Below are positions 1 to 45,895 of a stretch of DNA of 64,000 nucleotides, piece by piece. The translations under genes were made by a program, and so were the position numbers. How positions within the stretch are numbered: position 1 is the stretch's first letter; each line of letters starts with the position of its first letter. Source of the stretch: Macrostomum lignano (Eukaryota); the NCBI GenBank assembly GCA_002269645.1, contig NIVC01000376.1, forward strand, positions 663,598 through 727,597, read 5' to 3'. The notes under the pieces are model-generated. The model was not told the origin of the DNA and searched no databases. It saw only the letters and a list, made by a program, of their open reading frames with translations.

Positions 1-189
1 GCAGCTTTCAACATGGGCCTGACATTACAAGGTCTAGATTTTCCGTTATGCTTTAGACTGCTCTAGACAATAACAAAAATTATCAAATAATAACAGCGTC
101 ACAGGGTGCACTTAAAAGACTTGGGAGCGAACCTAGACCGGATCCGGGCAGAAGGCCAGAAGGCAGTTGACAAAATGACAATTGCGCAT

Positions 190-512
190 CACTATTACTA
201 ATAATAATAATCATTATAATTGACTACACCTGCTTTAACGAACAGATGTGCAACCGACGGCTCAGCCGCAGCTATTGTGCGGCGCATCTGAAGGCTGCAT
301 ACGGCTGTTCAGTCCAAGGACTGGGGGGTCGCTACACACACCCTCAGTTACCCCAGCTAATGCTGGCACCCATTTTACAGCTGGGTGAACTGAAGCAATG
401 CAGAGTTAAGTGTCTTGCTCAAGGACACAAATTGTTCCGAGTGGGCCGAGTATCGAACCCCCGACCTTTCAGTCGTGAGTCCGACGCTCTAGCCACTAGC
501 CTACAACGCCCT
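190..512 (-). mobile_element. tRNA-derived CORE-type SINE (family 1), copy A
   Basis: The reverse complement reads tRNA-like head (gttgtaggctagtgg...ggttcgatactc), then a MIR/CORE-like segment (tgtgtccttgagcaagacacttaactctgcattgcttcagttcacccagctgtaaaatggg), then an (ATT)n tail. Near-colinear copies lie at 56598-56912 and 58105-58422. Confidence 0.85.
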
Positions 513-924
513 TCTAGACTACAATCTCTTTGGCTACAACCCCAAAGCATTTCCAGATACACCTGTTGAATAATTTCGCCTTTTGTTAATACTCGTACGT
601 CGCACATCCTACTTTTGTTAATAACAAACAATCTGCTTTAATTATGATCAGCTTTATACAGAGAATATCGAGCGCTATATAGCGCTGTATAGCGCTCGAT
701 ATTATCTGGCTTTATATTATACGAGTGGAAATCCTCCTTCGGAGGAGAAAGGGGAAGAACTACCATCACCGGAATTCCATTCCCTGAAATCCATCAGCTG
801 ATTAGAACAGCCATAAAATATATGGTTCTTTTATCATTAACTTGAAAAAGGAAAAAAATTGATGCCACACTTGTATATTTGAAACTGTATATTTTAAATC
901 GGTTAACAAAAACTGGTGTCAGAG

Positions 925-3900
925 TCAGCCGATCTGGCCAGATGCCTGTGTCGCCCCTGCCCGGCCCTGAAGCGCCGTCCGTCCGACGGTGCCGAGTCGC
1001 CGCAGCCGCCGCCGGGCCGCCCAGTAGCCGCGCCATCGCTCGAAGTCGCCGGCACGCCCGCCCGCCTTGGCGAACTCCTCAGTGGAGAAGCTCGGGTCCG
1101 GCTGGACAGTGACGCACCAGCTCAGCGGAGCCGCGCTTGCCTCCTCCGCTACTTCAGCATCTACAGCGTCCTCTTCATCTTCAAGGTCGTCATCGTCGTC
1201 CTTGCCGCCAACTGAGAGCTCACCGGATGCCAGGCTGCCCAGAGCTCCTTGAATATCGGCAGCAGAGGGCGCCAGTGGGGTCAGCCTGAAGGGATTCAAC
1301 GAGCGGAGAAGCTCGGAAAATCCGGACACAGCGTCGCCGAAGACCAGGTAGGTGCCCGGGCGGAGGCGACGCTTGCTTTCCAACGCGGCGGCGACAACGT
1401 AGCGCGCTTTCAGACGACGTCGAAGCGTGCGCGCCGGCATCCGATCAGTGTGGGCGCCGTCCAGCAGCAGTCGGCCGGTGCGCGGCTCCCACACGGGCGG
1501 ATAGGCGCCTACCAGGCCGCAGCTGGCTCGGACAGAGCGCCACAGTGTTCCAGTTGCGTGTGCCACCGCCTGGGCCACCACCAGGTCGGTGCTGACCGCT
1601 ACAAACGGCAGCCAGAGATCCTCGGCCTGACGGTGATCGCCGAACAGTTGCCGGAGGGAGGCGTTGAGCTCCGCTCCGGTGTAAGTTGCCACCAGCGGCA
1701 GCGTTAGGTCGCGCAAGCGAGACCAGCGCGAGTCGATGCGCGCCCAGTGGCGCTGCAAGCCGGCTCGAGTGGCGCCAATGTCGCCTTCGTGCAGCGCCCA
1801 GGCCGCGGCGGTGAGCGCGCCGAGGCCGCTCCCAGCGATCATATCGACTGCGACGCCGTCGGACAGCAGAGCTTCCAGAACGCCGAAGTTGGCCAGACCG
1901 CGGGGCACCGCGCTGCCGAAGGCGAGGCCGACCCCGACGCCGGTGACGCAGCGGGTCAGGCGGGCGAGATCCGAGTGGGAGCTGATCCAGCTGGCCAACT
2001 CAGGCTGCTGTGCGGCCGACTGCGCTGCTGGTTTTGCAGCAGAGCCTTCGGGCTTTGGCTTGTAACGCCCTGTGCTGTAGCGCACATGGTACACGCGTCG
2101 AGCCCACCACCTGGTAATTGACAAAAATTTACTACTCATATCAGTAGGACGCTTGCAGCTTGCGATAGAAGGGAGTCAAGTTTTGAATCGTGCACTCTAC
2201 CAGGGGTTTAGGTCAGCGCCTTTAAACTCCTGAATTATCTCTAGACTAAATGTCGATTCAGGGTGCAAGTTGAATGAAAATCACCGACGTGTGGAAAACT
2301 CGAAAACTGAAATTACCTTCGCCGTCGGAGAAAGCGCAGCGAAGTGCCCTCCGGCACTGGACGCAGGGTCAGTGGGTGAAACACTGCCACGTGTACCCGA
2401 CTAAGATGCATCTTAGTCGCATCTTTCTAAGAGAGTAGAAATTTTCTGCTTTGCTCGGCACCTCGCCGCTCGCGTCAGCTCCAGCCACGTCCGAGTCGCA
2501 GCACACGACTAGACAGTCGAGAAAGCCGAGCACCATCCGGGTCCACCGGGTCACCGGACCGGTGCTGACTAGCACTAAGACGGAGAAGGCCAGCTCCAGG
2601 TCCTCCAGCCAGTTGCGCAGCGCCGCATCGGGCAGCTGATCAGCCGGACGGCCAAAGTGCCGCTCGACGTCGGTTTCCGACACAACCATGGCAGTGTCAG
2701 TGCCATGGGCTGCGTCCAGACAGAGCTGGAGGTGATGCAGCAGCTCGTTCAGGTTGAACCGTGTCGGATCAACCAGACGGGATCGGTTTCGCCGTCGCTG
2801 CCTCGTCAGCCAAGCAGTCACATGCGCAACTGGCTTCTCGTCTTCATCTGGCGCGTAGCCAAGGTCGTCGTCGTTGTTTTCTTTGAATCCATTGTCGCTT
2901 GCGTCACGACGGCAAACCCGAAGCCGCGTTTGTTTCCGGCGTTGGAGCCGCGTCAGCCGCTGCTGCTGACGGTCGAGCTGGGCCTCGCACATGCTGCCCA
3001 ACAGGCGGTCAAGGATGTTCAGCCTACGAGTATTGGAGACCCAAGCCCGAGCCAGGCTGAGCGGCAGTGAGACGGCGCGAGACTCGCGAACGGCCACAAT
3101 GTCACCGGACCAGCATGTGCTGACGGCGCTGCTCTCCATCAAGCCTTCAATCAGGCCGGCGCAGTCGCCGCGAGTAAACTCGGTGCTACCGTCGCGTCGA
3201 AGACGACCGCTGACAACGATCTCTACTGTTTCTGTGGGATCACCTTTTCGAACCAGATGATCTCCTCGGTGAAGCCTTCGATTGTTAATGAGCGTGTCGT
3301 AGAGAAACACCTGACGAGTCAGTTGACGCAGCAAGAAGCTAACGGCGGCCTCCGAAGAGGATTCTGTCGCTTTCGGGGATCTGAATTTCGGTTTTAATGT
3401 TTTGAAAGGCTTAATTGTTTGAATCTAGCACAAATCTACAGAGCTGCATAAGTATGTATGTCTTTACAAATACATTCTCAGAAATTTATAATTGGATAAA
3501 ATTCTGAATGCAGCTAAAAATTTAGTACAAGAATACATTTATACCATGTCTACATGAAACTTTTGCTTACAAATTAGCCGATGGGCTCCCTCAAAAATAA
3601 AATAAACCTGAACATCTCGTCCATCAAAGCGTCGGAAATGATGACTAAAACGACGCCGCCTCCGCCGCCGCCACCGCCAACGACGCCGCTGCCATCGCGT
3701 TTCGCATCATCTTCGTCATCAGCATCGTCGACAGCCGGTCGCACCAGGAATGGCAGTCGACTTTGCGCAAAGTACGGGACAAGACCGACCCAGCCTGGCA
3801 GAACGCTGCTGCTTCCCTGGCTGACGCCAAGCGTGGCCTGAGTTGGCGTGGTCTCCAGGCGTCCTTCCAGCACCAGGAAGGCGCGAAAACCGTCCAGAGC

Positions 3901-5349
3901 TTCCTTATCTGGTGCCACTGAGCAATACACAATTGTGATGTGATCTTCAGCGCCTTCGCTTGGGCTGGCCGTCCCACTGATCTCCTCGAGCAACCGGACA
4001 GCCAGCCGTCGGTACAAGGGCCTGCGCTCGTAGAATGACATGCTGGCAAAATTCACGCCTGAGGTTGCGGCTACTTCGTCCGCAAGGCGGTCGATTTCTT
4101 GGGAAAGCAAATCTTCGTAGAATTTTGTTTCTAGAAAACTGAAAAAAGCAGGAAGATTGCGTACTTTCTTTAATGCTCGTACTTTCTGGCCAAGTTCAGT
4201 CTTCAGTCTTTGATCTATTCAACGCCAAAGATCTTATTTGGGATTTGTCTACAAAAATTGGCTGAGGCTTGCCATGACAATAACACACATAAGAGCCAAT
4301 CCCCAAGGCACATAGAGTGTACATGCCTGACGTCAGAGCCGCTGTATACCCTGTTTGAGCGTGTGTATGAGGAGGATGCCCACAGGTCTCCTACCAATGT
4401 TTATGTATGTACTTTATCATTCTATGCGACAAGATAAAATGTCATTACGAGCTCCTCTACTTCGACCCCTCACTGCCACAGAAACGCATTTGATTAAGAA
4501 TCGAACAGAACGTGCTACCCGAGCACAAACATGTGCACACCTTCCTGCCTCCAGTCCGAGCCACTCCACCAGCACCAGCAGCAAGGTGTCGTTGATATGC
4601 GACCAAAGCTGCAGCAGCAAGTGTCGTTTGGCCTCCGGCCATGCGTCCAGACAGTTGGCAATGCTCGCAAAGGAGATCGACCAAAAACCGGCTGGCGGCA
4701 TCCGGGCGTGCAGGCTGCACGGAAACGAGTGGACAGCTTGCGAGATGCTCTGCCGTTGCCGCTCCGACAGCAGAGAGCGCGCCAGGCCGCTAGGACTGTA
4801 CAGAAGCCGCAGGCCGCCGGTGCGGAACCGAGTGGCAGCTCCGCCTCCACTGGCAGGCTGCAGGCTGAGTGTGACTTGAGTGTCCGAGTCGGACAGAACG
4901 AAAAGCCGATCGAGGCCCGTGTCGCTCTGGTAGAAGCAGTCGCAATGCACAAAACGCCCGCAACCTTGCTCACGACCTTCGGTTTGCAGAGCCTCGGCAA
5001 TGGCCGTTAAAGGCTTGGAGTCGAGCGTCTTGAAGAACGGCGAGTCGCTCAATGCTTCGATAAGGCTGTCGAGCTCGGTTCGCTTGCGCACCTCCTCGTC
5101 TATGAAGTCTTGCAGGGAGCTGATCGACCTGCTCACAGTGGAGCTACGATCTCGCCCCAACTGGCACTGAGCTTCGACCTCCGTTTCCAACTGGTAGCTG
5201 CTGGCGCTCAGCAGGCTGATGATGTTGGACAGAGTCTGCGTAGGGCGCACTGCCCGATAGCGCAAGAATTTGTACGCGAGACGTTGCACTGTGTGCGCGA
5301 GAGTGAGGCATACGGCCAGGGCAGCAAGTAGCCAGCTAAGCTGTAGCAT
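925..5349 (-). CDS. PNPLA6: Neuropathy target esterase / swiss cheese-like protein: N-terminal TM, cNMP-binding-like domains and patatin domain; multi-exon; catalytic motifs degenerate
   Basis: Approximate exons: 5349-~4470, 4138-3608, ~3380-2397, 2356-2317, ~2150-925. Hydrophobic N-terminus (MLQLSWLLAALAVCL) and CNB-like segments (LVRKGDPTETVEIVVSGRLR, GDIVAVRES). The patatin region has SDLARL, DLTLP, LWLPFVAVSTD, LWRSVRASCGL and LLLDGA, all matching the NTE family. Orthology versus paralogy is not resolved. Confidence 0.85.
4295..4400 (+). mobile_element. SINE family 2 internal fragment in intron 1 of the NTE-like gene
   Basis: gagccaatccccaaggcacatagagtgtacatgcc...gccgctgtataccctgtttgag matches the body of the full copy at 38181-38540. 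Confidence 0.6.
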
Positions 5350-5799
5350 GGTTTACCCAAGTTTTACAATATCTATATTGTTTAAACAACCAGCGTTGAC
5401 TTAATAAGCTGTTAAAATTAATTTGAGCCTCCGCCAGCGCCAATCGAGTTTGTGACACGTGCTTGACAAAACTTGGTTTTTAACATAGATAATTTATAGC
5501 TTTTTGCAGCTAATTTGGGCTTACGACGTACGCGCATTGAACTTAATCTAAGATAGGTTTGCCGATGTAACGGAGCTTTTGTCTATGGTAGCAAGGCTGG
5601 CACAGCGGCAAATTTGGTCCAACAAGCATCAATTTGGTCATAGCTTCATTTGCAACTGTTGCGGAGGAGCAAGATCAGCCCCAGAATAGTGGACCATATG
5701 CTAGGCTGTTGAAAGAATGCCATTGGCTTGTGAAGCACTCGACAGAGGTGAAAACCCAAAGAACATTGCAAGGTTGCTGAATGTAAAAGAAAAGATGGT

Positions 5800-7225
5800 T
5801 TGCATCATCCATCAGCGCGTTAAAACTCTGCCGGCAGAGATTGCCTGCGAAAGGGTGGCAATCGCCAAAGCAAGTAGCTCGAGAGCCTCTTGACCCGCTT
5901 CGGCAAAGGTGCGGGGCCAGTCAGGGCGGTCCGCCAGTACGTCCTGCAGCGTTATCTTCGTTGGGGAAGAAAGAGGCTCGTCTAGTTGCCCGAAGGAACC
6001 GGACGAGCCGTGAGATGTTCTCGGGTCTGCAAACGTCATCGATGGATGGGTTTGGACCGAGGTGGTTTAGCTGCTCCCTAGTGAAGAACGGGCATTGACA
6101 GACGAAATGCTGAGCATCTTCGTTGTCGTACTCGCAAAAGAGGCTCACTTCATTCCGGATGTCGCCCCGGAGGAAGCAGTGCCTAGCGAAGCAGCCATAA
6201 CCCGTGAGGGTCATAGCAAGAGCTCGGATGTCCTTCCTGCTTTGGTTCAGGAGGACAGTTCGGAGCTTTCGAGATGGACGAGGGACCGCCCCACGTGATT
6301 GTCGGCAGGTGGTGAGGTTCATCCATCTGTCCCTGTGCAGGGCGGAGGCCCAGGCATCAATGCTGCGATTGATGATGGCCGCAGGGATCGGAGCCAAGGG
6401 CAGGGGTCCCTGGAGGGAGCCGCCACTTCCTTGTTTTGCAAGCGAGTCGGCCAGCTCGTTTCCAGGGAAGCCCGCGTGACCTGGGATCCATTTGACCTGG
6501 ACGGCATTTTTGCGTCCCAGCGTATTGAGCATCCGGACGCAGTCGGAGACCGTCCGGGAGGCCGTAGTGGTGTGACAGAGGGCTAGCAGAGCAGTCTGAC
6601 TGTCGGAGCGAAAAACTATATTTCCGGAGGTGTTTTTGGTGCACAGCTCTGCAGCGCAGGAGCTAATAGCAAGGACCTCGTTCTGGAAGACAGTAGAGAG
6701 TCTTCCAGTGTGCTGGGCATGCGTGGCGAGCACGCGGCCATTGGTGAGAATGCAGACCCCAAAGCCGGAGAGGCCATCTTTTAGGGATCCGTCTGTGTAG
6801 CAGTGGACCTCCTGGGGATTCCAGTGGTTGTTTGCCTCCTCTCGGGGAGGAAGACTGACCTTGAATCAAAGACAAAGGTTGAGCGTGCGAGGTTCCCCGT
6901 CCGAGAGGACGTTGAGGCTGCCGCTCTCCTGCAAATCTTTGAGACAAAGGTCGGAGTGAGGCAGATGCTTGCGCTTAGCCATTGCCCTCTGGGGCTTGAG
7001 AGTGATGCCGGTGTCGATGAGACGCCGGGCAGCTTTTTCTGCCTCACTGCGGACGAAAATGTCCAGCGGAGGCAGGTCAAGGAAAGCGTTGAGGCTGTCA
7101 AAGGGAGCAGAGGGCGGGGCACTCATGAGCACGCCCCTGCACTCGTTTAAGAGCCTCGAAGCAGGTCTTAATCTGCAGGGCACTGGCCCAGGCTCGAGAG
7201 CCTCATGTCCAACTGCTACTTGATG
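5800..7225 (-). mobile_element. 5'-truncated, disrupted non-LTR retrotransposon (RNase H plus C-terminal CCHC; R1/Loa-like)
   Basis: ORF 6733-5921 has RNase H motifs SDSQTAL and WIPGHAGFPGNELADSLAK, followed by a CxxC-like...HxxxxC knuckle (LFCEYDNEDAQHFVCQCP). Upstream frames contain a post-RT LNAFLDLPPLDIF segment. Frameshifts and stops separate the pieces. Confidence 0.9.
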
Positions 7226-7649
7226 CAGTTGAGACGAACCCTTTGTTTACGTTGCAGAAATGCAGCAGAAGTTGAAGGAACAGTTTCAGTTGGTTATCAG
7301 ATTTTGACTATCAGCAGAGCTCTGGAAAAGCGACTGAAAATTGTTGGTAGAAACGCTGACTTTCCAGCAGTACGCAACAATCGCAGACGGTTGTGAGAAG
7401 GCAAGATTTTGTCCAATGGCTCACGAGCGTTCGGACCAAATTGATGCTTGTTGGGCCAAATTAAATGCCGCTGCGGCAGCCAATTGCTACCATAGACAAA
7501 AGCTCCGTTTCATTGGCAAACGTATCTTGGATTAACTTCAATGCGCGTAAGCCCAAATGGGGTGCAAAAAGCTATATTAAAGATTGGTTTCTCTATGCAT
7601 ACATGCTTGCTTATGGACCAAACAGTTTTAACCTCAAGCCAAATATACA

Positions 7650-7850
7650 TACAATATGGGAAAAATACAAAAAAGGGAAACTTGTAACTAAGACTGAGGA
7701 TATTACAGAAGTGTGGAAAGAATATCGCGAAAATCACTACAACTACGGTGTACTCAGTGAAGTGAGAGAAATCTTATTGTCAGAAGTTGCAGCTGCCATC
7801 AAAGAACTGAAGGCGCCAGACAACATAAGGCAGAATTTTTTATCTGGTGC
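7650..7850 (+). mobile_element. Possible short relic of a LINE endonuclease-RT linker
   Basis: KGKLVTKTEDITEVWKEY...ILLSEVAAAIKELKAPDNI resembles the region just before the RT of RTE/CR1-type LINEs. No catalytic motifs are present. Confidence 0.35.
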
Positions 7851-10800
7851 GAAATGGCATATCTTTTAAACACTACTACGAGTACTAACAGTAGCATAAT
7901 AAGTTGCTGCGATATGAATAATCGAACTTATACGTTCGTGTTATTAGGCTATTTAGTGGAAAATTGACTTTTGAAAGAAAAATCATTAAGGAAGCAATGA
8001 TTGCATTGAAGATGGTCTATCTACAAGGCTACGTGGTTTGAAATAGGATGTACTTAATTTAAAAAAACAAATAGCATTCCTGCAAGATTTCAACCGTGCG
8101 GCAGTTTCTTAAAGCATTTTTAATCTCTGTACAGTCTCTTTATTCGAGCGCAGTAACAACTTCTCAAAATCTCTTTTGTTTCCAAATTCCAATACCAAGA
8201 GCTTTACTTGCAACTCAAAAGCTTCATAAATCCAGGATGCCTTTTGAATCTCTCAACTGGCGTTTAAGCCATGGAGTTTAAATAGCTACAGAATTTTACG
8301 TCAGTTAGTGAAACGGTGAAATAAAAAAACTGCTTTAACTTAATGACATCTGAAGCAAGTACGTATCAAGAGTTTCAAGTAAAAAATTATCGTTAGAACA
8401 AGTTTCCAACCGGTCAAGTTTCTACCCAATCCATCAAAAACTCAGTTTGTTATCCGTGAGAACTTTCTGTAGCACCCTGTATATTGCTTGTATGAAATAT
8501 CTGCATTCCACTCTGTAGCTACCTGATTTGTCGTGAAGCAATAAAATTTGCATTACACTAAGGCTGGTTGATGAGCAGGTCAAGCAGAAAGGTAGCCAGA
8601 CAAAGAAGGAAAATCTCGGTTAAAGGAATGATTTGATGAGTTATTCAAAAAGCCTTAGCAGATCCCGGCGCTTTTGATCCGGAATTATTCCGAATTAGGC
8701 AAATCCAGTCAAGCCAAGAAGACTCTTGGAGCAGGGAAGCCCTGGAAGCTGAATTTATTCCTTATTATCAAGATTAACGACAACAAAATCGAAGTACGAG
8801 TGAAACAGCTCAGAAAAATCGAATTATCGTCAATTGGTTTACAATGAAACTAAATAAGCTGTATCAAATTTTTTTGATGTTTAATCAAAATCCAACTTGG
8901 CGATTTTTTATGATTTCAGCAGCCAAAGCAACGCAAGTATACAGACTTGGGTCTCTGTTAGAAGTTTTTCGTATCAACTTTTGTATCGCATGATTTTTTC
9001 TGCTTCATATTTTCAAGGGTTTTTCAGTAGATCCTGTACCCAGTGCTTGAATTGAAAGAGGAATTTTCAACGGATAAAATTTACCGTTTTTAAACCAGCA
9101 GTAAACCAGCAGATTCCATGGTCTGTCGAGGAGCTCATCCTCATGGTTAACAACCTGTCGGTGCCGTGCCTCCCAAGTTGTGACTTCTGGTGACTCATCT
9201 GTCTAACAGAACAGACCTGGCAGTAGCTGAGACAGGGTCAAACAGGCTCTGAAATTGCACGACCAGTTGGAAATCAGTGGATTAACTATTGAATCATTTT
9301 CTGGTCTGCCAAGCTGCCAGTCACAAAATTTCTGATTGCTGCTGTGACATAATCAATATGTACACATGTGCACTGAATGTGCGACTAGAATGTATAATTA
9401 CTGCAGGTAATTTTTTCACTTTTCTACTACCACTTTGTCTGCTGCAGTGTACAATATCAGTACATGTAAAGTGTAAATATATATTATTTGTGTACTGTAG
9501 CATTACATTATTCTAGAAACTGTGCATGTCTATGAAATGAATTCTATTTGGTTCCTTCTAGTCGTAATGCACCTCAACAAAATAAGAAAATAAGTCAACT
9601 ATTCTATTCAGAAGGTTAAATTTGCAGCATTTACAAACTAATGACAGTGGATTGCTCAAAAATCAGGCCAGCTAGGATCTGTATTAAAGCCATTCAATAA
9701 GCCAAATCCTCCAGAGACCATTCGATAGTAGAGTCTTCTTCGATAAAGTTTTGAAAAAGTCATCCTAAAGACAATTTAATTCTTTAAATCCCATCAATAG
9801 AGTATTTTATTGATTAATGCATGATTAAACGTTTGTACTACTTTCAATAGTACGCTTAATTTAAACCTTAAGTTTTCGATCTTTATCGGAGGAAATTGGA
9901 AAAGATTTTCAAAAAGATTTATACCGAGTGCCGTTCGTAGCTTTAACCTTCTCGCTATTGAACTGACTTTACTGTGCACTGGAGGTTGTAAGCTTCCCAT
10001 CCTAAAAGCAACTGTAAAAAATACATAAATCACCAGAATTTCTGTGGAATGAACTCACTCCAAAGTGCCACTGCGAGCTAAAATACGCATTTTAAAAATG
10101 AAGTTTTACGCTTTTAGATGAGGTTAAGCTGTCCACAGATTTAGGTAACTCTATAAGTAGACAAAAACTCTTTTCTAAACCAGCTAATCAAAAATCATAT
10201 TACCCAAAATGCTAGTCTTCATGTTGGCAATACACACACAGAGAGTAAGCAATTGCTCTAATTCCTAAAATGAATCATTGATCAACGCCTTACAACGTTT
10301 CGGGTTGGGTCGGGATCTCAAAGAGTAGTCCGCCATTAGTCAAATTAGCTGAAAAGAGACATCAAAATTAATTTAGGCCTCCACGTTGGCTCTTTTAAGC
10401 GTCCAGCAAAACCCTTTCTAGAGAATTTTTCTTTGATTTAAAATCGTCTGTTTTTCTAGCTTGTAAAGCACTAATCTGCCAACACAAGGATTTAAGTCGA
10501 CCTCGAGTTTTTCGACACATGACTTAATTGTGCTACACACAGGGACACACATTTAAAGCTGTTTTTTAGGTTTTGTCAGTCAGGAATTCCTCGGTGTTCC
10601 TCGCCACACGGGTTCACTGGCTACACTCTAAATAGTCACAAACACCTCCAGTCCAGGACCCCCAAAACTCTCCGGACCAGCCCTACCCCACGCCAGCCAA
10701 TTACCGCGCCGGAGGAGATAGAAAAGACTGAGTAAGCTGCCTGGCCCAGCCAATCAGATCTCACCAGGTCTCAGAGCCATAACCCAAGTCGAAAAAAATA

Positions 10801-12283: not shown

Positions 12284-12601
12284 TCATCCAAACCGCGGCC
12301 GGCTCATGGAGTTCAGGTAGCGGCGCAGGCTCGACAGGTACCGAGCAGCTTCAGCAGCGGATCGAAACTCGCCACTGGAGCCGAGGCTTCGCTTGCCGAA
12401 TTGCGGTCTCGGCACCGAGTGAACGTGGCGATCCAGGTAAGCCAGGTACTTGGCAACTTCCTCAATCGAGCCAAGGCTCTGCAGCCTCGGGGACGGCGGT
12501 TGCGGCGACCGTTTCACCGGGAAGAGAGACGAGCCGGAGGCCGTCAGAATCAAACAGAAGCTGCAGATGACGGCAAACCGAACTGATGTCCTGCCGATCA
12601 T
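12284..12601 (-). CDS. Neuropeptide F/Y-family precursor with two tandem amidated peptides (…RPQF-amide and …RPRF-amide)
   Basis: Signal peptide (MIGRTSVRFAVICSFCLILTASG), KR, 37-aa peptide 1 ending PRPQF-GKR, then 33-aa peptide 2 ending SRPRF-G-stop. Peptide 2 has Tyr 10 and 17 residues from its C-terminus, as in NPY/NPF. Two minus-strand AATAAA signals follow at 12192-12197 and 12154-12159. Confidence 0.9.
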   Translation of the reverse strand: MIGRTSVRFAVICSFCLILTASGSSLFPVKRSPQPPSPRLQSLGSIEEVAKYLAYLDRHVHSVPRPQFGKRSLGSSGEFRSAAEAARYLSSLRRYLNSMSRPRFG

Positions 12602-13930: not shown

Positions 13931-16900
13931 CTAAACAAAGTCTGATCTTTGCTTATTGTTGAAACATTCGCAGGCTCCAGCCGTCGCGATCGTAGCAGCT
14001 TCAGCGTTCAGGGCCGTATCGCTGAAAGGAATTTCCTGCTGCAGATGCTGCTGCTCCGGTTGAGTTACTGCTGGCTCCTCATTGGATGAAGCGGCTCGTC
14101 GATTCGACAGACGGCTCTGCCAATGCACCGCCAGCTTGATGAGCAGTTCCAGGACCTCGACAAGCCACACCAAGGTCAGGCCGATCCACATGGACAGCAG
14201 GCCACCGATCTGACTAAGCGTGGAGGCCAGAGTGCGCACCGGTTTGTCAACAATCTGCAGCACCGTGAAGTCTTTGCGACTGATGCGCAGCGTCAGGAGA
14301 CTGCGGGACACCAGCTTGTTGCTGATCACCAGCTTGGCGGCTTCGGTCTGAGCAAAGCAATCGGGCGGATGATGAAATAGAAGTCTTTGGGGCTGTGACA
14401 GTGCTAATTTGCTGATAACTCACAGTTAGTTGCTTTAAAGGGAAGCTTCCTTGTGCTTCAAAAGAGAAAAAAATAGTCTCAACAATAAACACCTACAATT
14501 TTCTGATTGCCCAAGGTTGTTCCTACCTTTGAAAGCGTAAAGTAATGAGCAAGCAGAGCAAAAAGTTATTTCAGCAAGTCAAAGACAAAGACGCTGAGAT
14601 GAAGACAAAAGAGGCTCGATGGAGACACAGACATCTTTTCAGCTAAATGAAGACTATTTTAGGTAATACCTACCTATGATTTCCATTTTGAGCATTTTGA
14701 GTACAACTGGTATATCCATATAGACACCGAAAACAGAAGTGACTACTCTTGAGTAGTTAATCACGGAAATGATAGAAAAAATTTGATTTTAATTTTTGTA
14801 CTTTTATGAATTACGAACGAACTTGCAGCCATAGGGAGGCGGGGTGGCGCATACACATTGCGGCCCACTTACTTCACAAAACGTATCTAAGCTTGTACTC
14901 ACTCTGCTAGAACCTTTAGCCCGGACAACATCCTCGTACATCTGCTTCACTGTCGCGTATGCTTGCCTGGCTGGATTGTTGAGAATTGAGTGGTTTCGAG
15001 ATCGATTCGGATCTTCAAACTCGTACTCGGGGCCGTGTTGCAGCAGCGGCAGCAGCTCGCTCTCGAACAAGTGCAGCTGCATAGAGTCTCGCGGCCACAG
15101 GGCCTGAGTAGTGGACACCTCGTAGGTGAGGTAGTTGCACGGCAGAGGGCAATGATAGTCCACCTGTTGGTCAAGCGGTTACAGAAGAACAAAGTATTTT
15201 CTGAGCTAAGAAAATCGATCAGGCCTAAAGCACTGTGTATAAAATTTCTAACGTCAAAAGATCTTAAGGACCTAGGACTGAGGACCTGAGGACCTAAATT
15301 GTAAATCAAAACTACTCTAATTGACCCATGAAGGTGCTCTCCCGTCCGCTTGCGCTTTGGAGGCACAGCATCAATGTCACTGGAAAGGTTCACTAAAAAT
15401 ATTCACTAATCTCCCATAAAGACCCGAATTCAAAAGTGATTTACATCTCGAAATGAACCCAGAAGGCCGCAGCGGGTTCGCTTTGTTGTCTGCACCAACC
15501 CCCGGAGGCTGAATGAGTTGAAATCGCCGTCTAGTCGTTCGCACATGGCAGACGCATTGCCCTTGGAGTAGAGCATTGAGGCCAGCGTGCAGCCGCACTC
15601 TCGCTCGATGTACTCCTGGTGATGCAGGCGCTTGCAGGCGTCGATGGAGTAGGCAAAATTGCGGCCGAAGATGTGCAGATGCGGTGGCACTCTGTGATGG
15701 CACTCTCCGTAGGGCCTCGGCAGTCGAGTCCAGTTGACGCTGGTGAAGCGAACCTCGGTCAGCGTGCCGGGGTACACGTTGAAGCCAAGCTTTGTAACAT
15801 CCGGGAAGCTGCCTTGCTCATGCAATACTACCCTGGCGCCCATGATCTGCGTGTTCGGATCGATGGTCATGCAGTCGTCGCAGCCGATGCTGAGCTCGTG
15901 GCCCAGGTAAAGCAGCATCTCCATCTCGATGACAGGATAACTGGTATTAACGCTGAAAGTGTAGCAATTGAGCCGGCTCTGATCGTGCACTTGACGCCAG
16001 CTGCCAACTGCCTGACAGCGAGGACTGCTCATGGGCAGCTCACTGGAGCCGTCTCTATATTTTTCAGCATCTGGGCGCAAAACAGTAAGAAAACAGCTGC
16101 GAACCTGCGTTGGAAGTTTAAAAAAATTGTGAAAGTTACGTTAGATATCTGGTCAAGATAATTAAGTCACTGTTGACGTTTACAAGTTGCCAACAGTTAC
16201 GAAAGTTAGGCAACTTTAGGCAACGAAAGTTGGTTAGGAATTTATTTTCATATCACTTCTCGATAAGACAGACCTAAAGTTCACACTCATCAGTTTCGGG
16301 TTTATCAGGTTCGAGCGTTTATAACCATCCAGTAATTGCATCCGGTATTGATTTTAATGCGTTTGAAATATTGAAACTGACCAGCTGATTCAGGGTGAAG
16401 CCTAAATCTGACGGCTCGTGCCCGGCCGGTATGTTGGAGAAGTAGCTGTTCAGCGAGAAGAAACCGGCCATGTAGGGACTCAGCTGCTTCCAGTCTTCCC
16501 GGCTGATGTTCTTCAGCCTGCTCAGCTGTTTGGCCGCCTGCTTCACTGCGGCCCAATAGTCTCGAGGAGCTCGCCAGCCGTGCCGGTAGATGGTCTCGCG
16601 GCCTTGCAAAGACAGAGGCACCTGGTTGCACACCGTGATCGACGGGAACTGAGCGTCCAAGCGGTGCACGTGGCTTGGCATCTGGACGACATCGAAAGCC
16701 AAGTAGAGGTTGATGATCTGCTGCAGGTTGATGGCGCAGCCGATCATCAGGGCGGCCACGAACACCAGCCAGAGGATCTGGTAGCGCCGGCTGTCTGCAC
16801 TGACAATGCGAGGTATGCCGCGCAGACTGGTGTTGCGGCAGAAGCGCAGCAGGATGTCTCTGGCGCGCTCGCTCTGTCCCACTCGGGAGTTTTGATCGGC

Positions 16901-17026
16901 CTGCATCTCGGCGCGCTTCACCGATCGCGTTTGATGGTCGGTGCAGTCGGACTTCGTGCGAGGACCCGGGTGGATTTTTAGATACGACCAGTTTTCAACA
17001 ACTCTCCCATCAGAGATCTTTCTCAT
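13931..17026 (-). CDS. DEG/ENaC (amiloride-sensitive sodium channel family) subunit, 4 exons, about 660 aa
   Basis: Exons 17026-16382, 16104-15445, 15163-14903 and 14347-13931 are each multiples of 3 with GT-AG phase-0 introns. Motifs: FCRNTSLRGIPRI, TM1, FPSITVCN, LNCYTF, GARVVLH, PRPYGEC, YSIDAC...CGC, CPLPC...Y, and TM2 LSQIGGLLSMWIGLT. Confidence 0.93.
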
Positions 17027-18008
17027 TTCAGTAATTTATTTTCGTCACAAATTTAGAGTCCGGGAGGCGGCGTGCCTTGGCCGCGGGACAGGATATAGTA
17101 ATAGGCTGCTGATCTGCATTGAGCCGCGTCAGCTACTAAAACTGCAACTGATCACGCAGGCAGGACTGATTCAGCTTGCAGGGACCGCCTCCCCAATTGC
17201 TCTATCTCCTCCCTCATTCTCTCGCTAGCCGGCATTGATCTGAAAATGACTGCAATAATCTGCCTCCCCTTAGGCCTCTATCGTTCATAAAAAAAGTTTT
17301 TTGTCCAACCCGATCATCCGCATTAGTATGCCGTATCTCATTGCCTCATCGCTTTTGATTCCCGACCCAGCGATGTAGGGGGAGGGGGCGTTGATCATCA
17401 GTTTGATCTCCACCAGTTGGAAATGATTGATATGCAAGAGACCGCAGCTAATTACCCCTCCCCTCTCTGACAAGGTCAAAGCCAAAATGCTATTCCAATT
17501 TGTTTTTGCTTCTGTTAGAGTTCTCATAATTATCTTTTTTGACTTTTGCTAGAGGACTTCTCAAAGAGAATGTCAAATCTAATGGGTTTCCAAGTTAGTT
17601 CGAGGGCGAGCTGGACCGTGTGGTGATATTTGCTAAATAATGTCTCCAAATTTCTGTGTTTGCGCTCTGGCAGCTTAGGAAAATCAACTGCAGCAAGGGC
17701 AGGGCAGACAGGGGGGAGGGTAGAGGGGAGCCGAGTTTGAGTGGAATGAAGCAAATTGAAGCCAGAGAGAGGTAAGCTGTAACAGAGTGCCTAACGTGCC
17801 TCGGGGAGGGGCATTGAAGCCCAGCTGTTTTGCGGAGCGAATCGATTGGGTGGGTAGGCCAGTAGGTAGCGCTAACGCCAGATGGCCAAGCTGCATGGAG
17901 TATGACAGGCCTCCATGCCGGGAGGTACCTGGTTGGTAGCTAATTATTTATCATGTTCTGAGAAACGCCATTCGGGTGTTGAGCAGGCATGCGAAAGATT
18001 GTTATACA

Positions 18009-21480
<3,472 letters not shown>

Positions 21481-35169: not shown

Positions 35170-35400
35170 GGAACAACAGCACAATAATAATAACAATAAT
35201 AATAACAATAATAATGATATTATTAATATTTAAAACAACAACAACAACAACGGCAAAAACTAAAACAACAATAATGACAACAATAACAACAGCAACAAAA
35301 ATAACAACAGCAACAACAATAACAACAAAAACAATAATAACAACAATAACAACAGCAACAAGAATAATAGCAACAACAATAGCAACAGCAACAACAACTG
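35170..35400. repeat. Compound (AAC/AAT/AGC)n trinucleotide tract abutting the 5' end of the LINE
   Basis: Direct reading. Confidence 0.95.
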
Positions 35401-38400
35401 CTGGAATCGACCACAGAGAGAATCCCAGTATCGAGCAATGGCTGAAGCCGCATGCCAGAGAGATCATTCTGGGCTACTTCAACCTACACCACCCCAAATG
35501 GGGTAGCCAGCCAGATCAAGGACCGGAAAGCACTGCTCAAGCTCACGCCCTGCTGCAGTGGTGTGATGCCTTCGACTACACCATTCTTAATTCGGGCGAA
35601 CCTACCTGCCTCGACCGCAGAAGCGGAGGCGAAAGTGTGCCGGACATCAGCCTGGCCACCACCAATATCGCTGATAAATGCTTCTGGGAAGCCCTCAGCG
35701 AACTCGGCTCCGACCACAAACCTATTCTTCTCAGCCTTCAAGAGGACTGCAGTGTCGTGAAAACCGTGCCGCGCTTTACTTGGTCCTGGAAGAAAGCTGA
35801 CTGGACCAGCTACCAAAACCACCTGCTGAGCAGGAGCGGCAACCTTAACAGAGGCACTATCAAACAACAAATCAAAAGTCTCACCGATACCATCATCAAA
35901 GCCGCGGAAGGCAGTATCCTCAAAAAGAAGATCTCCAGAGCCAATAAGCCCTACTGGGACGCCCAGCTTGAGGAACTGCGGGATGAGAGAAATGCGATCA
36001 GGAGAACAGGAGGTAACCACCAAGAGCTGAAGACCAAAAACTCCGAACTTCACAAACTGTGTGCCGAGAAGAAAGCTGAGTTCTGGAAAGAATATGTGAA
36101 CTCGCTGCATAACTACTCGGATGTCAAAAGAGTCTGGCAGACCATCAAGACCCTCAGCACTGGAGAGAAAAGCAACGCCCGTAACGAAGTGCTAAATGCC
36201 TACGGGAAAGAGTGTCGCACAGACCGCGAGAAAGCTGACGCATTCGGAAGACATTATGCCAGCATCAGTAAACTGCAGCACAAGGGAGATGACCGGCGAT
36301 TCAAAGTCCACACTGCCAAACGGCTCAAGGAATATGAAACCTACGACGCGTACGGAAACAACTTTACTCAGGGCGAACTGCAAAGGGGTCTGGATCGACT
36401 GGAGACCGATAAAAAATGTGGACCAGACAGGATCGAGGTAGCCTTTTTTAAGCATCTTCCCGACTCGTGGTGGGCCGCCTGGCTTACGGTCTTTAACCGG
36501 TTTGGCGCCTGGGCCACTGCCCGGGAATTTGGAAAAAGGCCGTCATTATCCCTCTCCTCAAGGATGGTAAAGACCCTAAGGACTGTGCCAGCTTCCGGCC
36601 AGTCAGCCTGACCTCCATCTGTGTCAAAATCATGGAGCGCATGGTCCTGGATCGGCGTCTTCATTGGATGGAAAACAACAAGATCCTACAACCATTCTTT
36701 CAAAGAAGAAGGGGCTGCGAGGAACAAGTGGCTAGACTTGTGCAGGAAATTCAAAACGGATGGGAAGCCCGCAGACATCTTAAAATCATCGCTGTTACTC
36801 TCGATTGCTCCAAAGCTTTCGACCGGGTTTGGAGAACGCTTCTGATTGCCATCCTCATGGACCAGAAGGTGCCATCTCGAATGGTACACTGGTTTGCCAG
36901 TTTTCTCGAGGGTCGGCAAATCGCTGTCAGAGTCGGTGACACGCTTGGTAAATGGAGACCTCTGTGCGAAGGAGTTCCACAGGGAGCTGTCAGTTTGCCT
37001 GTTCTCTTTTTGCTCTACATCAATGTCTGGAAAGACTGGCTGGTGCCCCACATCAACTATGGAGGCTTCGCGGATGACCTCAGCATCTGGGCCTCAGACG
37101 CCGACCTCGGCGTCGTCAAGGAACGCATACAAGAAGCTCTCCACAAAATAGAGGAATGGGCCAGCCACCTTCGCATCGAGATCAATCCTAGTAAAACCGA
37201 GAGCTGCCTATTCTCGCGTGATCCCAGAGACAAAAACTGACAACTCGATCTCAGCATCCTCAACCAAAGAATCCCTACTAACAAGACCATCAAATACGAG
37301 TACATGGAAGTCTGGATCGATCAGGACTTGCTGTTTCGAACTCACTGCGATTCTGTGATTGCTAACATCAAAAGAAGAACAGCTGTCATTCGGGCTTTGT
37401 TCAATCGTGAATGGGGATGGAGTCTCCCTGCTCTGAGGAGCGTCTACAAAGCCGTTGTTGAGGCAGTTGTCTGGCATGCCGCTGCTGCCTGGATGCCGTG
37501 GCTCTCCAACACCCGCCTCGACGCCCTTGATCGAGCCCAAAAAGAGGCCTTACGGCTGCTGACCGGATTGCCCAAGTCTACCCATCCACCTCGAAGCGGG
37601 ATGCGAGCCAATCAGCATCGAAGCCAAAAGGTGTGTACTCCTCTCAGTTGAGAAAGCCCTGAGAAGACCACCCGAGGACCCTTGGCGTCAAGTCTGCGAA
37701 AGGAACACCAACATCAGACTCAAGGCCAATCGCGGACTTCGGGAACAAGCCAACAACATTCTTAGACACCTGCTCCCTGACGTTCGCAGGCCATGCGATT
37801 GGACGCGCCTGGAATCGTGGCGGAACCTCAAGGAGTTGGGAGTCCATCTTCACCTGCAACTGATCGATCAGCTGGACATCAACCAACAGACCAACATCCG
37901 CAAGACCATCGACAGGCATCAAGTTGAGTGCACCTACTTCACGGACCGCAGAGGTTGCGAGAATGGCGGCTCCGCGTGGATCCTGCTGGACGCCTACTCG
38001 GGTAGGACGCCTACCCAATCCGTACTGGAAGACAGCCCGCGGGTAGGCGGTGCAACTCGTTCGAATCTGAGCTTATCGCTCTCCTGCATTTTCTGGCCGG
38101 GCTCCGCCTGCATTTTCACCGATAGCCAATCAGCCGTGAGAGCTCTGTGTTCCGATCAGCCGACCATGAACCCGCTGCTCAGGGGGCCATAGCCCAGCGG
38201 TAGCGCAGCTGCTCTGGTGTGCCAGCGACCCAGGCTCGATTCCAAGTGCAGTCACATTAATTTGGGGCTAAATTGGAATCTCGGCTTGGCTCTGCTCGTG
38301 CAATTAACGGCCTTGAGAGCCAACCCCCAAGGCGCAGTGAAGTGTACATGCCTAACGATAAAATAAAGTTAGGGCCGCTGTACACTCCTGTGTGAGTGTG

Positions 38401-45464: not shown

Positions 45465-45895
45465 GCCTGCAGTTGGCTTGACAACTTGGACAATAAATAT
45501 TTTTACGCTCGTAACTAGCTCGATATGCCTTTTCCGTAGCTGAGCGTCGAACGTCGAGAGCGGAACTCGAAGAAGAATTATAAAGAGGGAGTCGGAGTGA
45601 GTGCGGGCAAAAGACTTGGTTTCTGGCACGGCCTGTGATTGGTTGAAATTCGCAGAGCTTTGAGACTCGCTGGATAGGGAAAGGAGGCATCAAGGGCAGA
45701 TTTACGGGAGTCTGTTTCAGTAACGTAAGCAGCTACTACAGTTTTTATATGAAATCCATTGTGAAAATCGCACCAGCATATTGACGTCAGGATCGAATGG
45801 GTCACATGACATTAGATAATTCATAGAAGTTAAGTTTATTAATGCTATCAAAGTGCTTTGCATCTAAATTTACCAGTCATGTAAGATATACACAC

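What the first reader, a model, noticed from the sequence alone, without database searches (positions are those of the whole stretch)
1500..1925. NTE/swiss-cheese-like protein appears to be a pseudoenzyme
Seen: the nucleophile elbow reads DMIAGSGLGAL, versus DLVGGTSIGSF in PNPLA6, placing Gly (codon 1825-1827) at the catalytic Ser position. The oxyanion loop reads FGSAVPRG instead of GGGGARG. The catalytic Asp (LLDGA) is retained. The gene keeps long open exons, the TM anchor and CNB-like domains. Established: NTE/SWS needs the Ser-Asp dyad and Gly-rich loop for phospholipase activity, and fly SWS also binds a PKA catalytic subunit. Inference: a catalytically dead paralog retained as a lipid/cNMP sensor, PKA anchor or regulator of the active copy. 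Two independently altered motifs argue against a single sequencing error. The adjacent Ser (one position earlier) is unlikely to substitute, but this is not excluded.
Basis: partly seen in the sequence, partly recalled or inferred. Interest (0 to 1): 0.7.

Follow-up and report, generated by a model that had tools for sequence, protein, structure and literature searches.

The report
Dead-site NTE-like flatworm gene, frameshifted copy
This is a copy of a Macrostomum lignano (flatworm) gene of the neuropathy-target-esterase family whose active-site serine and glycine loop are really missing, so the protein is probably not an esterase. This particular copy also has a 17-base insertion that breaks its reading frame, while a sister copy elsewhere in the genome is intact.

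Summary
On the minus strand the patatin domain reads FGSAVPRG (1897-1920), DMIAGSGLGAL (1813-1845, Gly codon GGC at 1825-1827) and LLLDGA (1453-1470). The window is Macrostomum lignano Mlig_3_7, gene Mlig003299.g1.

It is not a sequencing error. The duplicate copy g2 (97% identical, another contig) has the same codons. All 150 nearest relatives, from a library representing about 15 billion proteins, have Ser at that column, and nearly all have GGGGARG.

The protein is a very diverged NTE/SWS-family member (about 30% identity). It has an N-terminal hydrophobic anchor, a P-loop-like domain and a confidently modelled patatin fold with Gly at the tip of the nucleophile elbow. The same genome has two other NTE-family paralogue groups with intact motifs. 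dN/dS between g1 and g2 is 0.28, so the protein is under purifying selection. A non-catalytic "pseudoenzyme" is the best reading.

It shifts the frame upstream of the patatin domain and leads to a stop at 2369-2371. GenBank hides it as a 17-nt "intron". This copy is probably a young pseudogene.

The cNMP-sensor and PKA-anchor ideas are untested. No orthologue outside M. lignano was found. Interest is modest.

The parts
925..5349 (-). Whole gene: Macrostomum lignano Mlig003299.g1, a diverged NTE/SWS-family paralogue. It has four exons in the intact sister copy. GenBank PAA84401.1 annotates only the 3' 663 codons.
   Evidence: The window is 100% identical to NIVC01000376.1 over 9 kb. The exon model is, corrected with P0013 and P0012.
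4541..5349 (-). Exon 1: ATG at 5347-5349 in an ACCATG context, then a hydrophobic stretch LSWLLAALAVCLTLAHTV (about 5287-5343) followed by R/K residues, which looks like an N-terminal membrane anchor. Next comes a region with weak, collinear similarity to NTE CNB1 and to the conserved YLGL motif (here WLGL).
   Evidence: and 69 (hhalign E 0.004, weak).
4139..4540 (-). Intron 1 (GT..AG). The acceptor TTTTTTCAG is conserved in the sister copy.
   Evidence: P0013 and P0163 read ...LGLEAG|SFLETKF across this junction. Splice sites are conserved in L001.
3608..4138 (-). Exon 2: CNB2-like region with an acidic/Gly-rich insert.
   Evidence: the profile alignment starts at residue 355.
3381..3607 (-). 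Intron 2 (GT..AG, 29% GC).
   Evidence: P0013 reads ...DEMFR|SPKATE across this junction.
2317..3380 (-). Exon 3: CNB3-like segment (3056-3280) and most of the NTE P-loop-like domain. It is one continuous exon in the sister copy but is interrupted here by the 17-nt insertion.
   Evidence: Pfam cNMP_binding 2e-5, below threshold. NTE_Ploop scores 27.8 bits against a cut-off of 27 on the spliced model. Profile alignment.
2414..2430 (-). 17-nt insertion TTAGAAAGATGCGACTA inside the coding exon, absent from the sister copy. It shifts the frame (+2).
   Evidence: Pairwise alignment with L001. Three-frame view. GenBank skips it as a 17-nt 'intron': the gene span minus the CDS is 223 nt, which is 206 + 17.
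2369..2371 (-). Premature TGA reached in the shifted frame (...ENFYSLRKMRLRCILVGYTWQCFTH*). It lies upstream of the patatin domain.
2427..2461 (-). Hypothetical 35-nt GT..AG micro-intron that would restore the frame (...ASGE|KDATKMHLS...). An ab initio model of the older assembly uses it. No RNA evidence was seen here.
   Evidence: model A. P0163 reads GEKDATKMHLS. The other introns of this gene are 206-402 nt.
2111..2316 (-). Intron 3 (AAG|GTAATT ... ACCAG|G).
   Evidence: The junction ...FLRRRR|WWARRVY is confirmed by the RNA-guided models P0012 and P0162.
925..2110 (-). Last exon: end of the P-loop-like domain, the patatin domain (1426-1926), an acidic low-complexity insert, a C-terminal tail, and the stop at 925-927.
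1897..1920 (-). Degenerate oxyanion loop FGSAVPRG (family consensus LGGGGARG). Four consecutive columns that are at least 95% conserved are changed.
1813..1845 (-). Nucleophile elbow DMIAGSGLGAL. Gly (GGC, 1825-1827) replaces the invariant Ser. In the model it lies between strand 90-94 and helix 96-106 of the exon-5 numbering.
   Evidence: Ser in 150 of 150 relatives. (pLDDT above 90)..
1453..1470 (-). LLLDGA: the dyad Asp (1459-1461) is retained. The following G, Y and N of the family motif DGGYxNN are changed to A, H and R.

Best explanation
The locus is one of several near-identical copies of Mlig003299 left by a recent genome duplication. Mlig003299 is a fast-evolving paralogue of the NTE/SWS (PNPLA6/7) family in the flatworm Macrostomum lignano.

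Shown: the protein keeps the family's layout (N-terminal hydrophobic anchor, CNB-like region, P-loop-like domain, patatin fold, dyad Asp). It has lost the nucleophile Ser (now Gly) and three of the four glycines of the oxyanion loop. Some neighbouring conserved active-site residues have also changed.

Inferred: it cannot hydrolyse esters by the Ser-Asp patatin mechanism and is a pseudoenzyme. Purifying selection on the coding sequence, including the dead patatin domain, implies a non-catalytic role. The most plausible role is a membrane-anchored lipid- or partner-binding regulator acting beside the two paralogue groups with intact motifs in the same genome. Which partner or ligand is unknown.

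Shown: the copy in this window has a 17-nt insertion that shifts the frame 5' of the patatin domain. Inferred: this copy is most likely a very young, redundant pseudogene, while the sister copy g2 (intact 1194-codon ORF) carries the function.
For: - Identity of the locus.
- Family membership: Patatin E 1.9e-14. NTE_Ploop is above its cut-off on the spliced model. The NTE N-terminal profile aligns at E 1e-32 over residues 355-863. The top 150 relatives are NTE/SWS-type proteins at 27-41% identity.
- Dead site: Ser in 150 of 150 relatives against Gly here; GGGGARG against GSA(V/A)PRG. The protein deviates at 12 of 42 columns that are at least 90% conserved (relatives: median 1, 95th percentile 5). 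Eight of the 12 lie in the three catalytic motifs, and M993C lies in the conserved (R)ASM motif.
- Fold: the AlphaFold core has pLDDT above 90, with Gly95 at the strand-turn-helix elbow. The best PDB matches are PlpD, CapV/CapE and patatin.
- Not an error: the codons are identical in L001.
- Selection: g1 against g2 gives Sd 35.5, Nd 29.5, dS 0.040, dN 0.011, omega 0.28; omega is 0.21 in the patatin part. dS is about equal to intron divergence, 3-5%.
- Gene integrity: splice sites, start and stop are conserved in both copies, and g2 has an intact 1194-aa ORF.
- Paralogues with intact motifs: P0161 (SGTSIGS, GGGGARG) and P0139 (AGTSIGA, GGGGARG), both M. lignano.
- Frameshift in this copy.
- Expression, indirect: GenBank models g1 and g2 cross the 206-nt intron and come from an RNA-guided annotation (PMC5730564).
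Against: - No activity, binding or expression data were available.
- No orthologue outside M. lignano was found, so constraint is measured only between two young copies (65 differences). Omega cannot be assigned to a lineage.
- CDS divergence (1.8%) is above the 1.1% genome mean for paralogous CDS (PMC10733133). This fits some relaxation of constraint.
- One copy is already frameshifted.
- The annotated transcripts cover only the 3' part of the gene, and the 17-nt gap suggests they derive from g2-type RNA, so transcription of g1 itself is unproven.
- Ser890 next to the Gly could in principle act as nucleophile.
Confidence: 0.6

Rival explanations
1. The whole gene family (all copies) is a decaying pseudogene. 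The active-site losses are part of neutral degeneration of a redundant NTE paralogue, and no copy makes a useful protein.
For: One copy is frameshifted. The protein is the most deviant of 152 family members bar a few. No orthologue was seen in other species. The annotated models are 5'-truncated. CDS divergence is above the genome mean.
Against: g2 keeps an uninterrupted 1194-codon ORF with conserved start, stop and all six splice sites. Identity to every relative, including the same-genome paralogues, is only about 30%. That implies long independent evolution, during which a neutral ORF of this length would have been broken. Omega is 0.28, and 0.21 in the patatin region. Thirty of 42 conserved fold columns are retained, and the AlphaFold core is confident.
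Confidence: 0.2
2. The protein is still a hydrolase or acyltransferase that uses a non-canonical nucleophile (the adjacent Ser890, AGC 1828-1830) together with the retained Asp.
For: A Ser sits one residue before the canonical position. The Asp, the Arg of the oxyanion loop and the surrounding fold are kept.
Against: In the model Ser94 (exon-5 numbering) ends the beta-strand and Gly95 occupies the elbow tip. A-G-S-G-L does not form a shifted GxSxG. Three oxyanion glycines are replaced by Ser, Ala, Val, and the next residue by Pro. None of the 150 relatives uses such an arrangement.
Confidence: 0.08
3. The window's copy is functional because the insertion is removed as a 35-nt GT..AG micro-intron (2427-2461), giving ...ASGE-KDATK-MHLS... 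in frame.
For: A canonical GT and a pyrimidine-rich TTAG acceptor exist and restore the frame. An ab initio model of the older assembly uses exactly this intron (P0163). Omega downstream of the insertion is still 0.23.
Against: The other introns of this gene are 206-402 nt, and the species' mean intron length is about 1.1 kb (PMC5730564). In g2 the same GT lies in ordinary coding sequence that matches the family profile. The RNA-guided GenBank model does not use this intron. The low downstream omega is equally explained by a very recent insertion.
Confidence: 0.15
4. The Ser to Gly change is a sequencing or assembly error.
For: GGC and AGC differ by one base.
Against: The paralogous contig has an identical 33-nt elbow sequence. 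Models from the independent older assembly show the same residues. Eleven other conserved columns, including eight in or beside the catalytic motifs, are also changed.
Confidence: 0.01

Closest known systems
Neuropathy target esterase / Swiss cheese (human PNPLA6 and PNPLA7, Drosophila SWS, and arthropod SWS such as P0015, P0016, P0017)
   Same: N-terminal hydrophobic anchor, CNB-like region, NTE P-loop-like domain, the HSDxxRLxRxxTG lead-in, a patatin domain with the dyad Asp, and the EDLW and LWRxVRAS motifs. Identity is 27-30% over about 400-630 residues.
   Different: The nucleophile Ser is Gly. GGGGARG is GSAVPRG. DGGYxNN is DGAHxDR. Only one CNB gives a (sub-threshold) Pfam hit. The N-terminal 350 residues are barely recognisable.
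The other NTE-family paralogues of M. lignano: Mlig027371.g4 / Mlig009229.g1 (P0161, P0179) and Mlig021950.g1 / Mlig032374.g3 / Mlig021287.g1 (P0139, P0182, P0183)
   Same: Same genome and same domain set. They share a few derived residues with Mlig003299 (GLA instead of GLV before the oxyanion loop; PP(V/I)W). They group with it in a neighbour-joining tree, which is weak evidence.
   Different: They keep GGGGARG, G-T-S-I-G and DG. They are 42% identical to each other but only 29-30% to Mlig003299. Their three copies are almost identical: 0 synonymous differences in 728 codons, against dS 0.04 for g1 and g2.
Bacterial CNB + P-loop-like + patatin proteins of about 600 aa (P0001, P0190, P0191; 'RssA/CRP-like', Myxococcota MAG P0195)
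   Same: 33-35% identity over the P-loop-like and patatin part, as close as the animal proteins.
   Different: They have no membrane anchor, no introns, a single CNB and intact catalytic motifs.
PlpD of Pseudomonas aeruginosa (PDB 5fqu, 5fya), the closest solved structure
   Same: Patatin fold: sequence E 1.4e-15, Foldseek E 1e-12.
   Different: PlpD has G-T-S-M-G and a Gly-rich loop and is an active lipase. It lacks the NTE regulatory half.
Patatin-like proteins without the catalytic Ser (for example Toxoplasma TgPL1)
   Same: I recall from memory that TgPL1 has Gly in place of the catalytic Ser yet has a biological role. That would be the same kind of dead patatin domain.
   Different: It is not in the NTE family. 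I could not verify the residue in the papers available here, so this is a lead only.

Membership tests
NTE/SWS (PNPLA6/7) family | Patatin domain (PF01734) | tested here: met
   E 1.9e-14, 54.8 bits against a cut-off of 27.7. Patatin fold in the model and in the PDB search.
NTE/SWS (PNPLA6/7) family | NTE P-loop-like domain (PF24179) upstream of the patatin domain | tested here: met
   27.8 bits against a cut-off of 27 on the spliced model, so it passes only just. Clear alignment to a family profile, E 1e-32.
NTE/SWS (PNPLA6/7) family | Cyclic-nucleotide-binding-like domains in the N-terminal half | tested here: inconclusive
   One cNMP_binding hit below threshold (24.8 bits on the exon-3 ORF; 22.6 bits on the spliced model; cut-off 27.5). 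CNB2 and CNB3 align to the family profile. CNB1 shows only a weak collinear hhalign match, E 0.004. Pfam finds nothing in residues 75-470.
NTE/SWS (PNPLA6/7) family | N-terminal transmembrane anchor | tested here: inconclusive
   A hydrophobic stretch of about 19 residues directly after the Met, followed by R/K residues. No TM predictor was available.
NTE/SWS (PNPLA6/7) family | Catalytic Ser in GxSxG | tested here: not met
   Gly at the column where 150 of 150 relatives have Ser.
NTE/SWS (PNPLA6/7) family | Gly-rich oxyanion loop GGGxRG | tested here: not met
   GSAVPRG in g1 and GSAAPRG in g2, against GGGGA(R/K)G.
NTE/SWS (PNPLA6/7) family | Catalytic Asp (DG[AG]) | tested here: met
   LLLDGA; the column is invariant.
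NTE/SWS (PNPLA6/7) family | Phenyl valerate esterase / lysophospholipase activity | not testable with these tools
   Needs an enzyme assay.
Pseudoenzyme (catalytically dead homologue retained by selection) | Homologous fold with catalytic residues lost | tested here: met
Pseudoenzyme (catalytically dead homologue retained by selection) | Purifying selection on the coding sequence | tested here: met
   Omega 0.28 between g1 and g2, P 4e-7. This rests on one pair of young copies only; no cross-species test was possible.
Pseudoenzyme (catalytically dead homologue retained by selection) | Intact, expressed gene | tested here: inconclusive
   g2 is intact. The window's g1 is frameshifted. Expression is inferred only from an RNA-guided annotation. 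The gene is not mentioned in any paper or supplement searched.
Pseudoenzyme (catalytically dead homologue retained by selection) | Demonstrated lack of activity and a non-catalytic function | not testable with these tools
   Needs biochemistry and RNAi.

The most novel reading that the evidence does not exclude
Mlig003299 is a naturally esterase-dead member of the NTE/SWS family that selection has kept for a non-catalytic job. That job could be the kinase-regulating or scaffolding role proposed for fly SWS, or control of the paralogues with intact motifs. If so, it would be a natural separation-of-function allele of a neurodegeneration gene family, in a flatworm where RNAi and transgenesis work. 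None of the 150 nearest relatives lacks the Ser, and the paper search found no description of a dead NTE-family member.
Probability: 0.35. Interest if true: 0.5.

Novelty: new variant of a known kind. Interest (0 to 1): 0.33.

Why it matters
NTE/SWS proteins are studied because their esterase activity protects neurons and glia. Fly SWS is also reported to have a separate, non-enzymatic role as a regulator of a PKA catalytic subunit. A family member that evolution has stripped of the esterase site, yet keeps under constraint, would give a natural handle on what the rest of the protein does.

On the practical side, the GenBank protein for this locus (PAA84401.1) hides a frameshift behind a 17-nt 'intron' and lacks the first two exons. 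The deposited model therefore should not be used as evidence that this copy is intact.

Otherwise this is an ordinary outcome of gene duplication in a recently polyploid genome.

Tried and rejected
- The first two word-index protein searches, with the patatin exon, returned only distant bacterial patatins and missed the species' own proteins. The exhaustive search was needed. A third search with P0012 found only further M. lignano models and bacterial proteins, and no orthologue from another species.
- My first gene model was wrong at two points. The exon-2 acceptor was placed at 4207 and is corrected to 4138 by P0013. I also assumed a 35- or 62-nt intron at 2427-2461/2488. Comparison with L001 showed that the real cause of the frame change is a 17-nt insertion.
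- A spliced model could not be looked up in the contig index.
- I tried a within-genome yardstick for omega using the three copies of the canonical paralogue P0139. They have 0 synonymous differences in 728 codons, so no ratio can be formed.
- The neighbour-joining tree of the patatin region puts Mlig003299 on a long branch beside the two M. lignano paralogues. All distances are about 0.63-0.66, so I do not rely on it.
- Pfam at E up to 10 finds no domain in residues 75-470.
- Literature: no paper holds 'Mlig003299', and it is absent from two supplement sets. One paper holds both 'neuropathy target esterase' and 'pseudoenzyme', and it is unrelated. The recalled Ser to Gly change in Toxoplasma TgPL1 could not be confirmed.
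- The 17-nt insert has no second copy in the window. No tRNA genes were found. No second NTE-like gene lies in the window.
Full report
**1. What is in the sequence**

The finding lies on the minus strand. A 404-codon open frame (925-2139) contains ...RCVTGVGVGLAFGSAVPRGLANFGVLEALLSDGVAVDMIAGSGLGAL... and ...GRLLLDGAHTDRMP. Coordinates were checked by script:
- FGSAVPRG = 1897-1920.
- DMIAGSGLGAL = 1813-1845.
- The preceding Ser is AGC at 1828-1830.
- LLLDGA = 1453-1470.

Pfam Patatin matches 1426-1926 at E 1.9e-14.

**2. Where the window comes from**

An exhaustive HMMER search of 1.84 billion representative proteins gave two hits at 97-98% identity. Everything else was at 41% or below. Cluster look-up names these two hits as Macrostomum lignano proteins:
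- BOX15_Mlig003299g2 (PAA76857.1, P0012).
- BOX15_Mlig003299g1 (PAA84401.1, P0162).
- UniProt models from the older ML2 assembly.

The contig that carries g1 (NIVC01000376.1, assembly Mlig_3_7, GCA_002269645.1) is 100% identical to window 1-9000. The window is therefore M. lignano and the gene is Mlig003299.g1.

The contig that carries g2 (L001, NIVC01000785.1) aligns at 96.8% over more than 5 kb, flanks included. M. lignano is a recent polyploid. About 70% of this assembly is present as three paralogous copies, with about 2.2% SNP divergence genome-wide and 1.1% in CDS (PMC10733133; PMC5730564).

**3.

Exons were derived from open frames, GT..AG sites and the spliced protein models P0012, P0013 and P0162. 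In the sister copy the exons, given in window coordinates, are:
- 5349-4541
- 4138-3608
- 3380-2317
- 2110-925

Read in L001, this structure gives an uninterrupted 1194-aa protein. Start, stop and all six splice sites are the same in both copies.

In the window the third exon is interrupted. At 2414-2430 there are 17 extra bases (TTAGAAAGATGCGACTA) that L001 lacks. They shift the frame. The original frame then runs into TGA at 2369-2371, upstream of the rest of the P-loop-like domain and of the whole patatin domain.

The GenBank model for g1 reads ...ENFYS-QMHLS... straight across the insertion. Its gene span exceeds its CDS by 223 nt, which is 206 + 17, so the insertion was annotated away as a 17-nt 'intron'. 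That annotation was built by mapping RNA assemblies with BLAT at 80% identity or more. The RNA probably came from a g2-type copy.

An ab initio model of the older assembly (P0163) instead removes a 35-nt GT..AG piece (2427-2461) and reads ...ASGE-KDATK-MHLS.... This shows that the insertion is present in an independent assembly. It also shows that a frame-restoring micro-intron is formally possible. However, the other introns here are 206-402 nt, and in g2 the same GT is ordinary coding sequence that fits the family profile.

My reading is that the window's copy is most likely a very recent pseudogene (about 0.6-0.7), with rescue by the micro-intron less likely (about 0.15).

**4. Family**

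- On the spliced model, Pfam gives Patatin (51 bits), NTE_Ploop (27.8 bits, just above the cut-off of 27) and cNMP_binding (22.6 bits, below the cut-off).
- A profile built from the N-terminal halves of 58 long relatives aligns to residues 355-863 of g1 and g2 at E 1e-32. It covers the CNB2/CNB3-like and P-loop-like regions and the HSDxxRLxRxxTG lead-in.
- The first 350 residues give only a weak but collinear hhalign match: anchor, CNB1 start, and the YLGL motif aligning to WLGL (E 0.004). Pfam finds nothing in residues 75-470.
- The N-terminus is a hydrophobic stretch of about 19 residues followed by basic residues.
- Named relatives include SWS/NTE of Lepeophtheirus, Strigamia, Amphibalanus and the flatworm Cichlidogyrus.
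- Identity to all of them is only 27-30%.

It is therefore an NTE/SWS-family protein by architecture, but an extremely diverged one.

**5. The active site**

I aligned the patatin region with the 150 best relatives.
- The nucleophile column is Ser in 150 of 150 and Gly only in g1 and g2. The loop is LGGGGARG or a near variant in all but a few.
- Of 42 columns conserved at 90% or more, g1 deviates at 12. Relatives deviate at a median of 1 and a 95th percentile of 5.
- Eight of the 12 lie in the three catalytic motifs: G862S, G863A, G864V and A865P in the oxyanion loop; S891G; G1015A, Y1016H and N1019R after the Asp. M993C lies in the conserved (R)ASM motif.
- The other 30 columns are kept, including EDLW, LWRxVRAS, PP and the dyad Asp.
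- An AlphaFold2 model of the last exon, made with a 26-sequence alignment, has pLDDT above 90 over the patatin core. It places residues 90-94 (MIAGS) in a strand, Gly95 at the turn and residues 96-106 in the helix. This is the classical nucleophile elbow, with Gly at its tip and the neighbouring Ser at the end of the strand.
- Foldseek finds PlpD, CapV/CapE, patatin and VipD. The best sequence match in the PDB is PlpD.

Inference from established knowledge of patatin-fold enzymes (Ser-Asp dyad, Gly-rich oxyanion hole): canonical esterase chemistry is not possible. The adjacent-Ser idea is unlikely but needs an assay.

**6. Error, decay or retention**

It is not an error. The 33-nt elbow sequence is identical in L001 and the loop differs only by Val to Ala. 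The ML2-derived model P0163 agrees.

Selection was measured between g1 (17 nt removed) and g2 (a 12-nt in-frame insert removed), over 1191 codons:
- Sd 35.5, Nd 29.5, dS 0.040, dN 0.011, omega 0.28.
- Omega is 0.21 in the patatin part and 0.23 downstream of the insertion.
- The excess of synonymous changes has binomial P 4e-7, or 6e-4 if a third of random changes were synonymous.
- dS matches intron divergence of 3-5%.

A 1194-codon ORF with conserved splice sites, only about 30% identical to anything else, also argues for long-term maintenance.

Caveats:
- This is one pair of young copies.
- Substitutions cannot be polarised.
- CDS divergence (1.8%) is above the genome's 1.1% mean.
- No orthologue from another species was found in any search. 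Macrostomum coverage of those collections is unknown.

**7. Active paralogues**

Two other M. lignano NTE-family groups were among the hits:
- P0161/P0179 (Mlig027371.g4, Mlig009229.g1).
- P0139/P0182/P0183 (Mlig021950.g1, Mlig032374.g3, Mlig021287.g1).

Both have GGGGARG, G-T-S-I-G and DG. They are 42% identical to each other and 29-30% identical to Mlig003299.

A few shared derived residues and a neighbour-joining grouping hint at duplication within the flatworm lineage. This is weak evidence.

**8. What it probably does**

- Shown: family membership, loss of the catalytic motifs, a kept fold, constraint between the two copies, paralogues with intact motifs, and the frameshift in this copy.
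- Inferred: the protein is a non-catalytic, membrane-anchored member of the family.
- Speculative: what it binds.

The cNMP-sensor idea gets no support. The only CNB-like Pfam hit is below threshold, and the family's conserved Arg of the phosphate-binding cassette aligns to Trp. PKA anchoring or regulation of the canonical paralogues cannot be judged from sequence.

**9. Novelty and score**

The locus is already deposited as a hypothetical 'PNPLA domain-containing protein'. No paper mentions it, and the paper search found no description of a dead-site NTE-family member. Dead paralogues of enzymes are common, so this is a new variant of a known kind.

Interest is modest (0.33). It would rise if other Macrostomum species prove to have orthologues with the same dead site.

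Noticed in passing
window 12284-12601 (-): A 105-aa ORF with a signal-peptide-like start and two peptides ending ...VPRPQF-G-KR and ...YLNSMSRPRF-G-stop. It looks like a neuropeptide F/Y-type precursor giving two amidated RP(Q/R)F peptides. It is buried inside a 3456-aa fused UniProt model (P0163).
   Followed up: partly
window 2414-2430 and L002 gene 6001-8215: GenBank protein PAA84401.1 (Mlig003299.g1) hides a 17-nt frameshifting insertion as a non-canonical 17-nt 'intron'. Both GenBank models (g1, g2) start at internal Met codons and omit exons 1-2, although an intact 1194-codon ORF exists in g2.
   Followed up: yes
L003, L004, L005 (M. lignano contigs NIVC01000205.1, NIVC01002425.1, NIVC01002580.1): The three copies of the canonical NTE paralogue (P0139, P0182, P0183) have 0 synonymous and 2-3 non-synonymous differences over 728 codons, whereas Mlig003299 g1 and g2 differ at dS 0.04. 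The paralogous copies are of very unequal divergence (gene conversion, collapsed haplotypes or different subgenome pairs?).
   Followed up: no
window 15430-17026 (-): Two exons of an amiloride-sensitive sodium channel (ASC/DEG-ENaC) gene (Pfam ASC, E 2e-18 and 3e-13).
   Followed up: partly
window 17976-20911 (+): Exons of a flavin/pyridine-nucleotide oxidoreductase (Pyr_redox_3, E 2e-29). The last open frame runs into a (CTAT/CTAT..)-type microsatellite translated as LSIY repeats.
   Followed up: partly
window 44226-45629 (-): A 467-aa single-exon ORF with a weak rhodopsin-family 7TM match (E 2e-4, below threshold) and a GC-rich, Arg/Gln-rich tail. Probably an orphan GPCR.
   Followed up: partly
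window 5921-6733 (-) and 35214-37240 (+): Non-LTR retrotransposon remains: an RNase H-containing fragment directly upstream of the NTE-like gene's start, and a longer endonuclease/reverse-transcriptase ORF pair further on.
   Followed up: partly
window about 20.5-20.9, 24.5-25.4, 26.6-27.5, 27.8-28.8, 29.4-30.6, 33.1-34.3, 39.0-39.8, 55.6-56.2, 61.0-61.8 kb: Very dense micro- and minisatellite arrays, for example a 33-nt unit translated as [11 protein letters not shown] at 29.4-30.6 kb. They produce long spurious ORFs and strong GC/AT skews. This fits the 15% simple/tandem repeat content reported for this genome.
   Followed up: no
window about 661-705 (+): A near-perfect inverted repeat (AATATCGAGCGCTATA ... 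TATAGCGCTCGATATT) about 220 nt downstream of the gene's stop codon. Its nature is unknown.
   Followed up: no
tool behaviour: The word-index protein search did not return the 97-100% identical M. lignano proteins when queried with the window's own exon, but did when queried with P0012. Negative results from that tool for window-derived queries should be treated with care.
   Followed up: no
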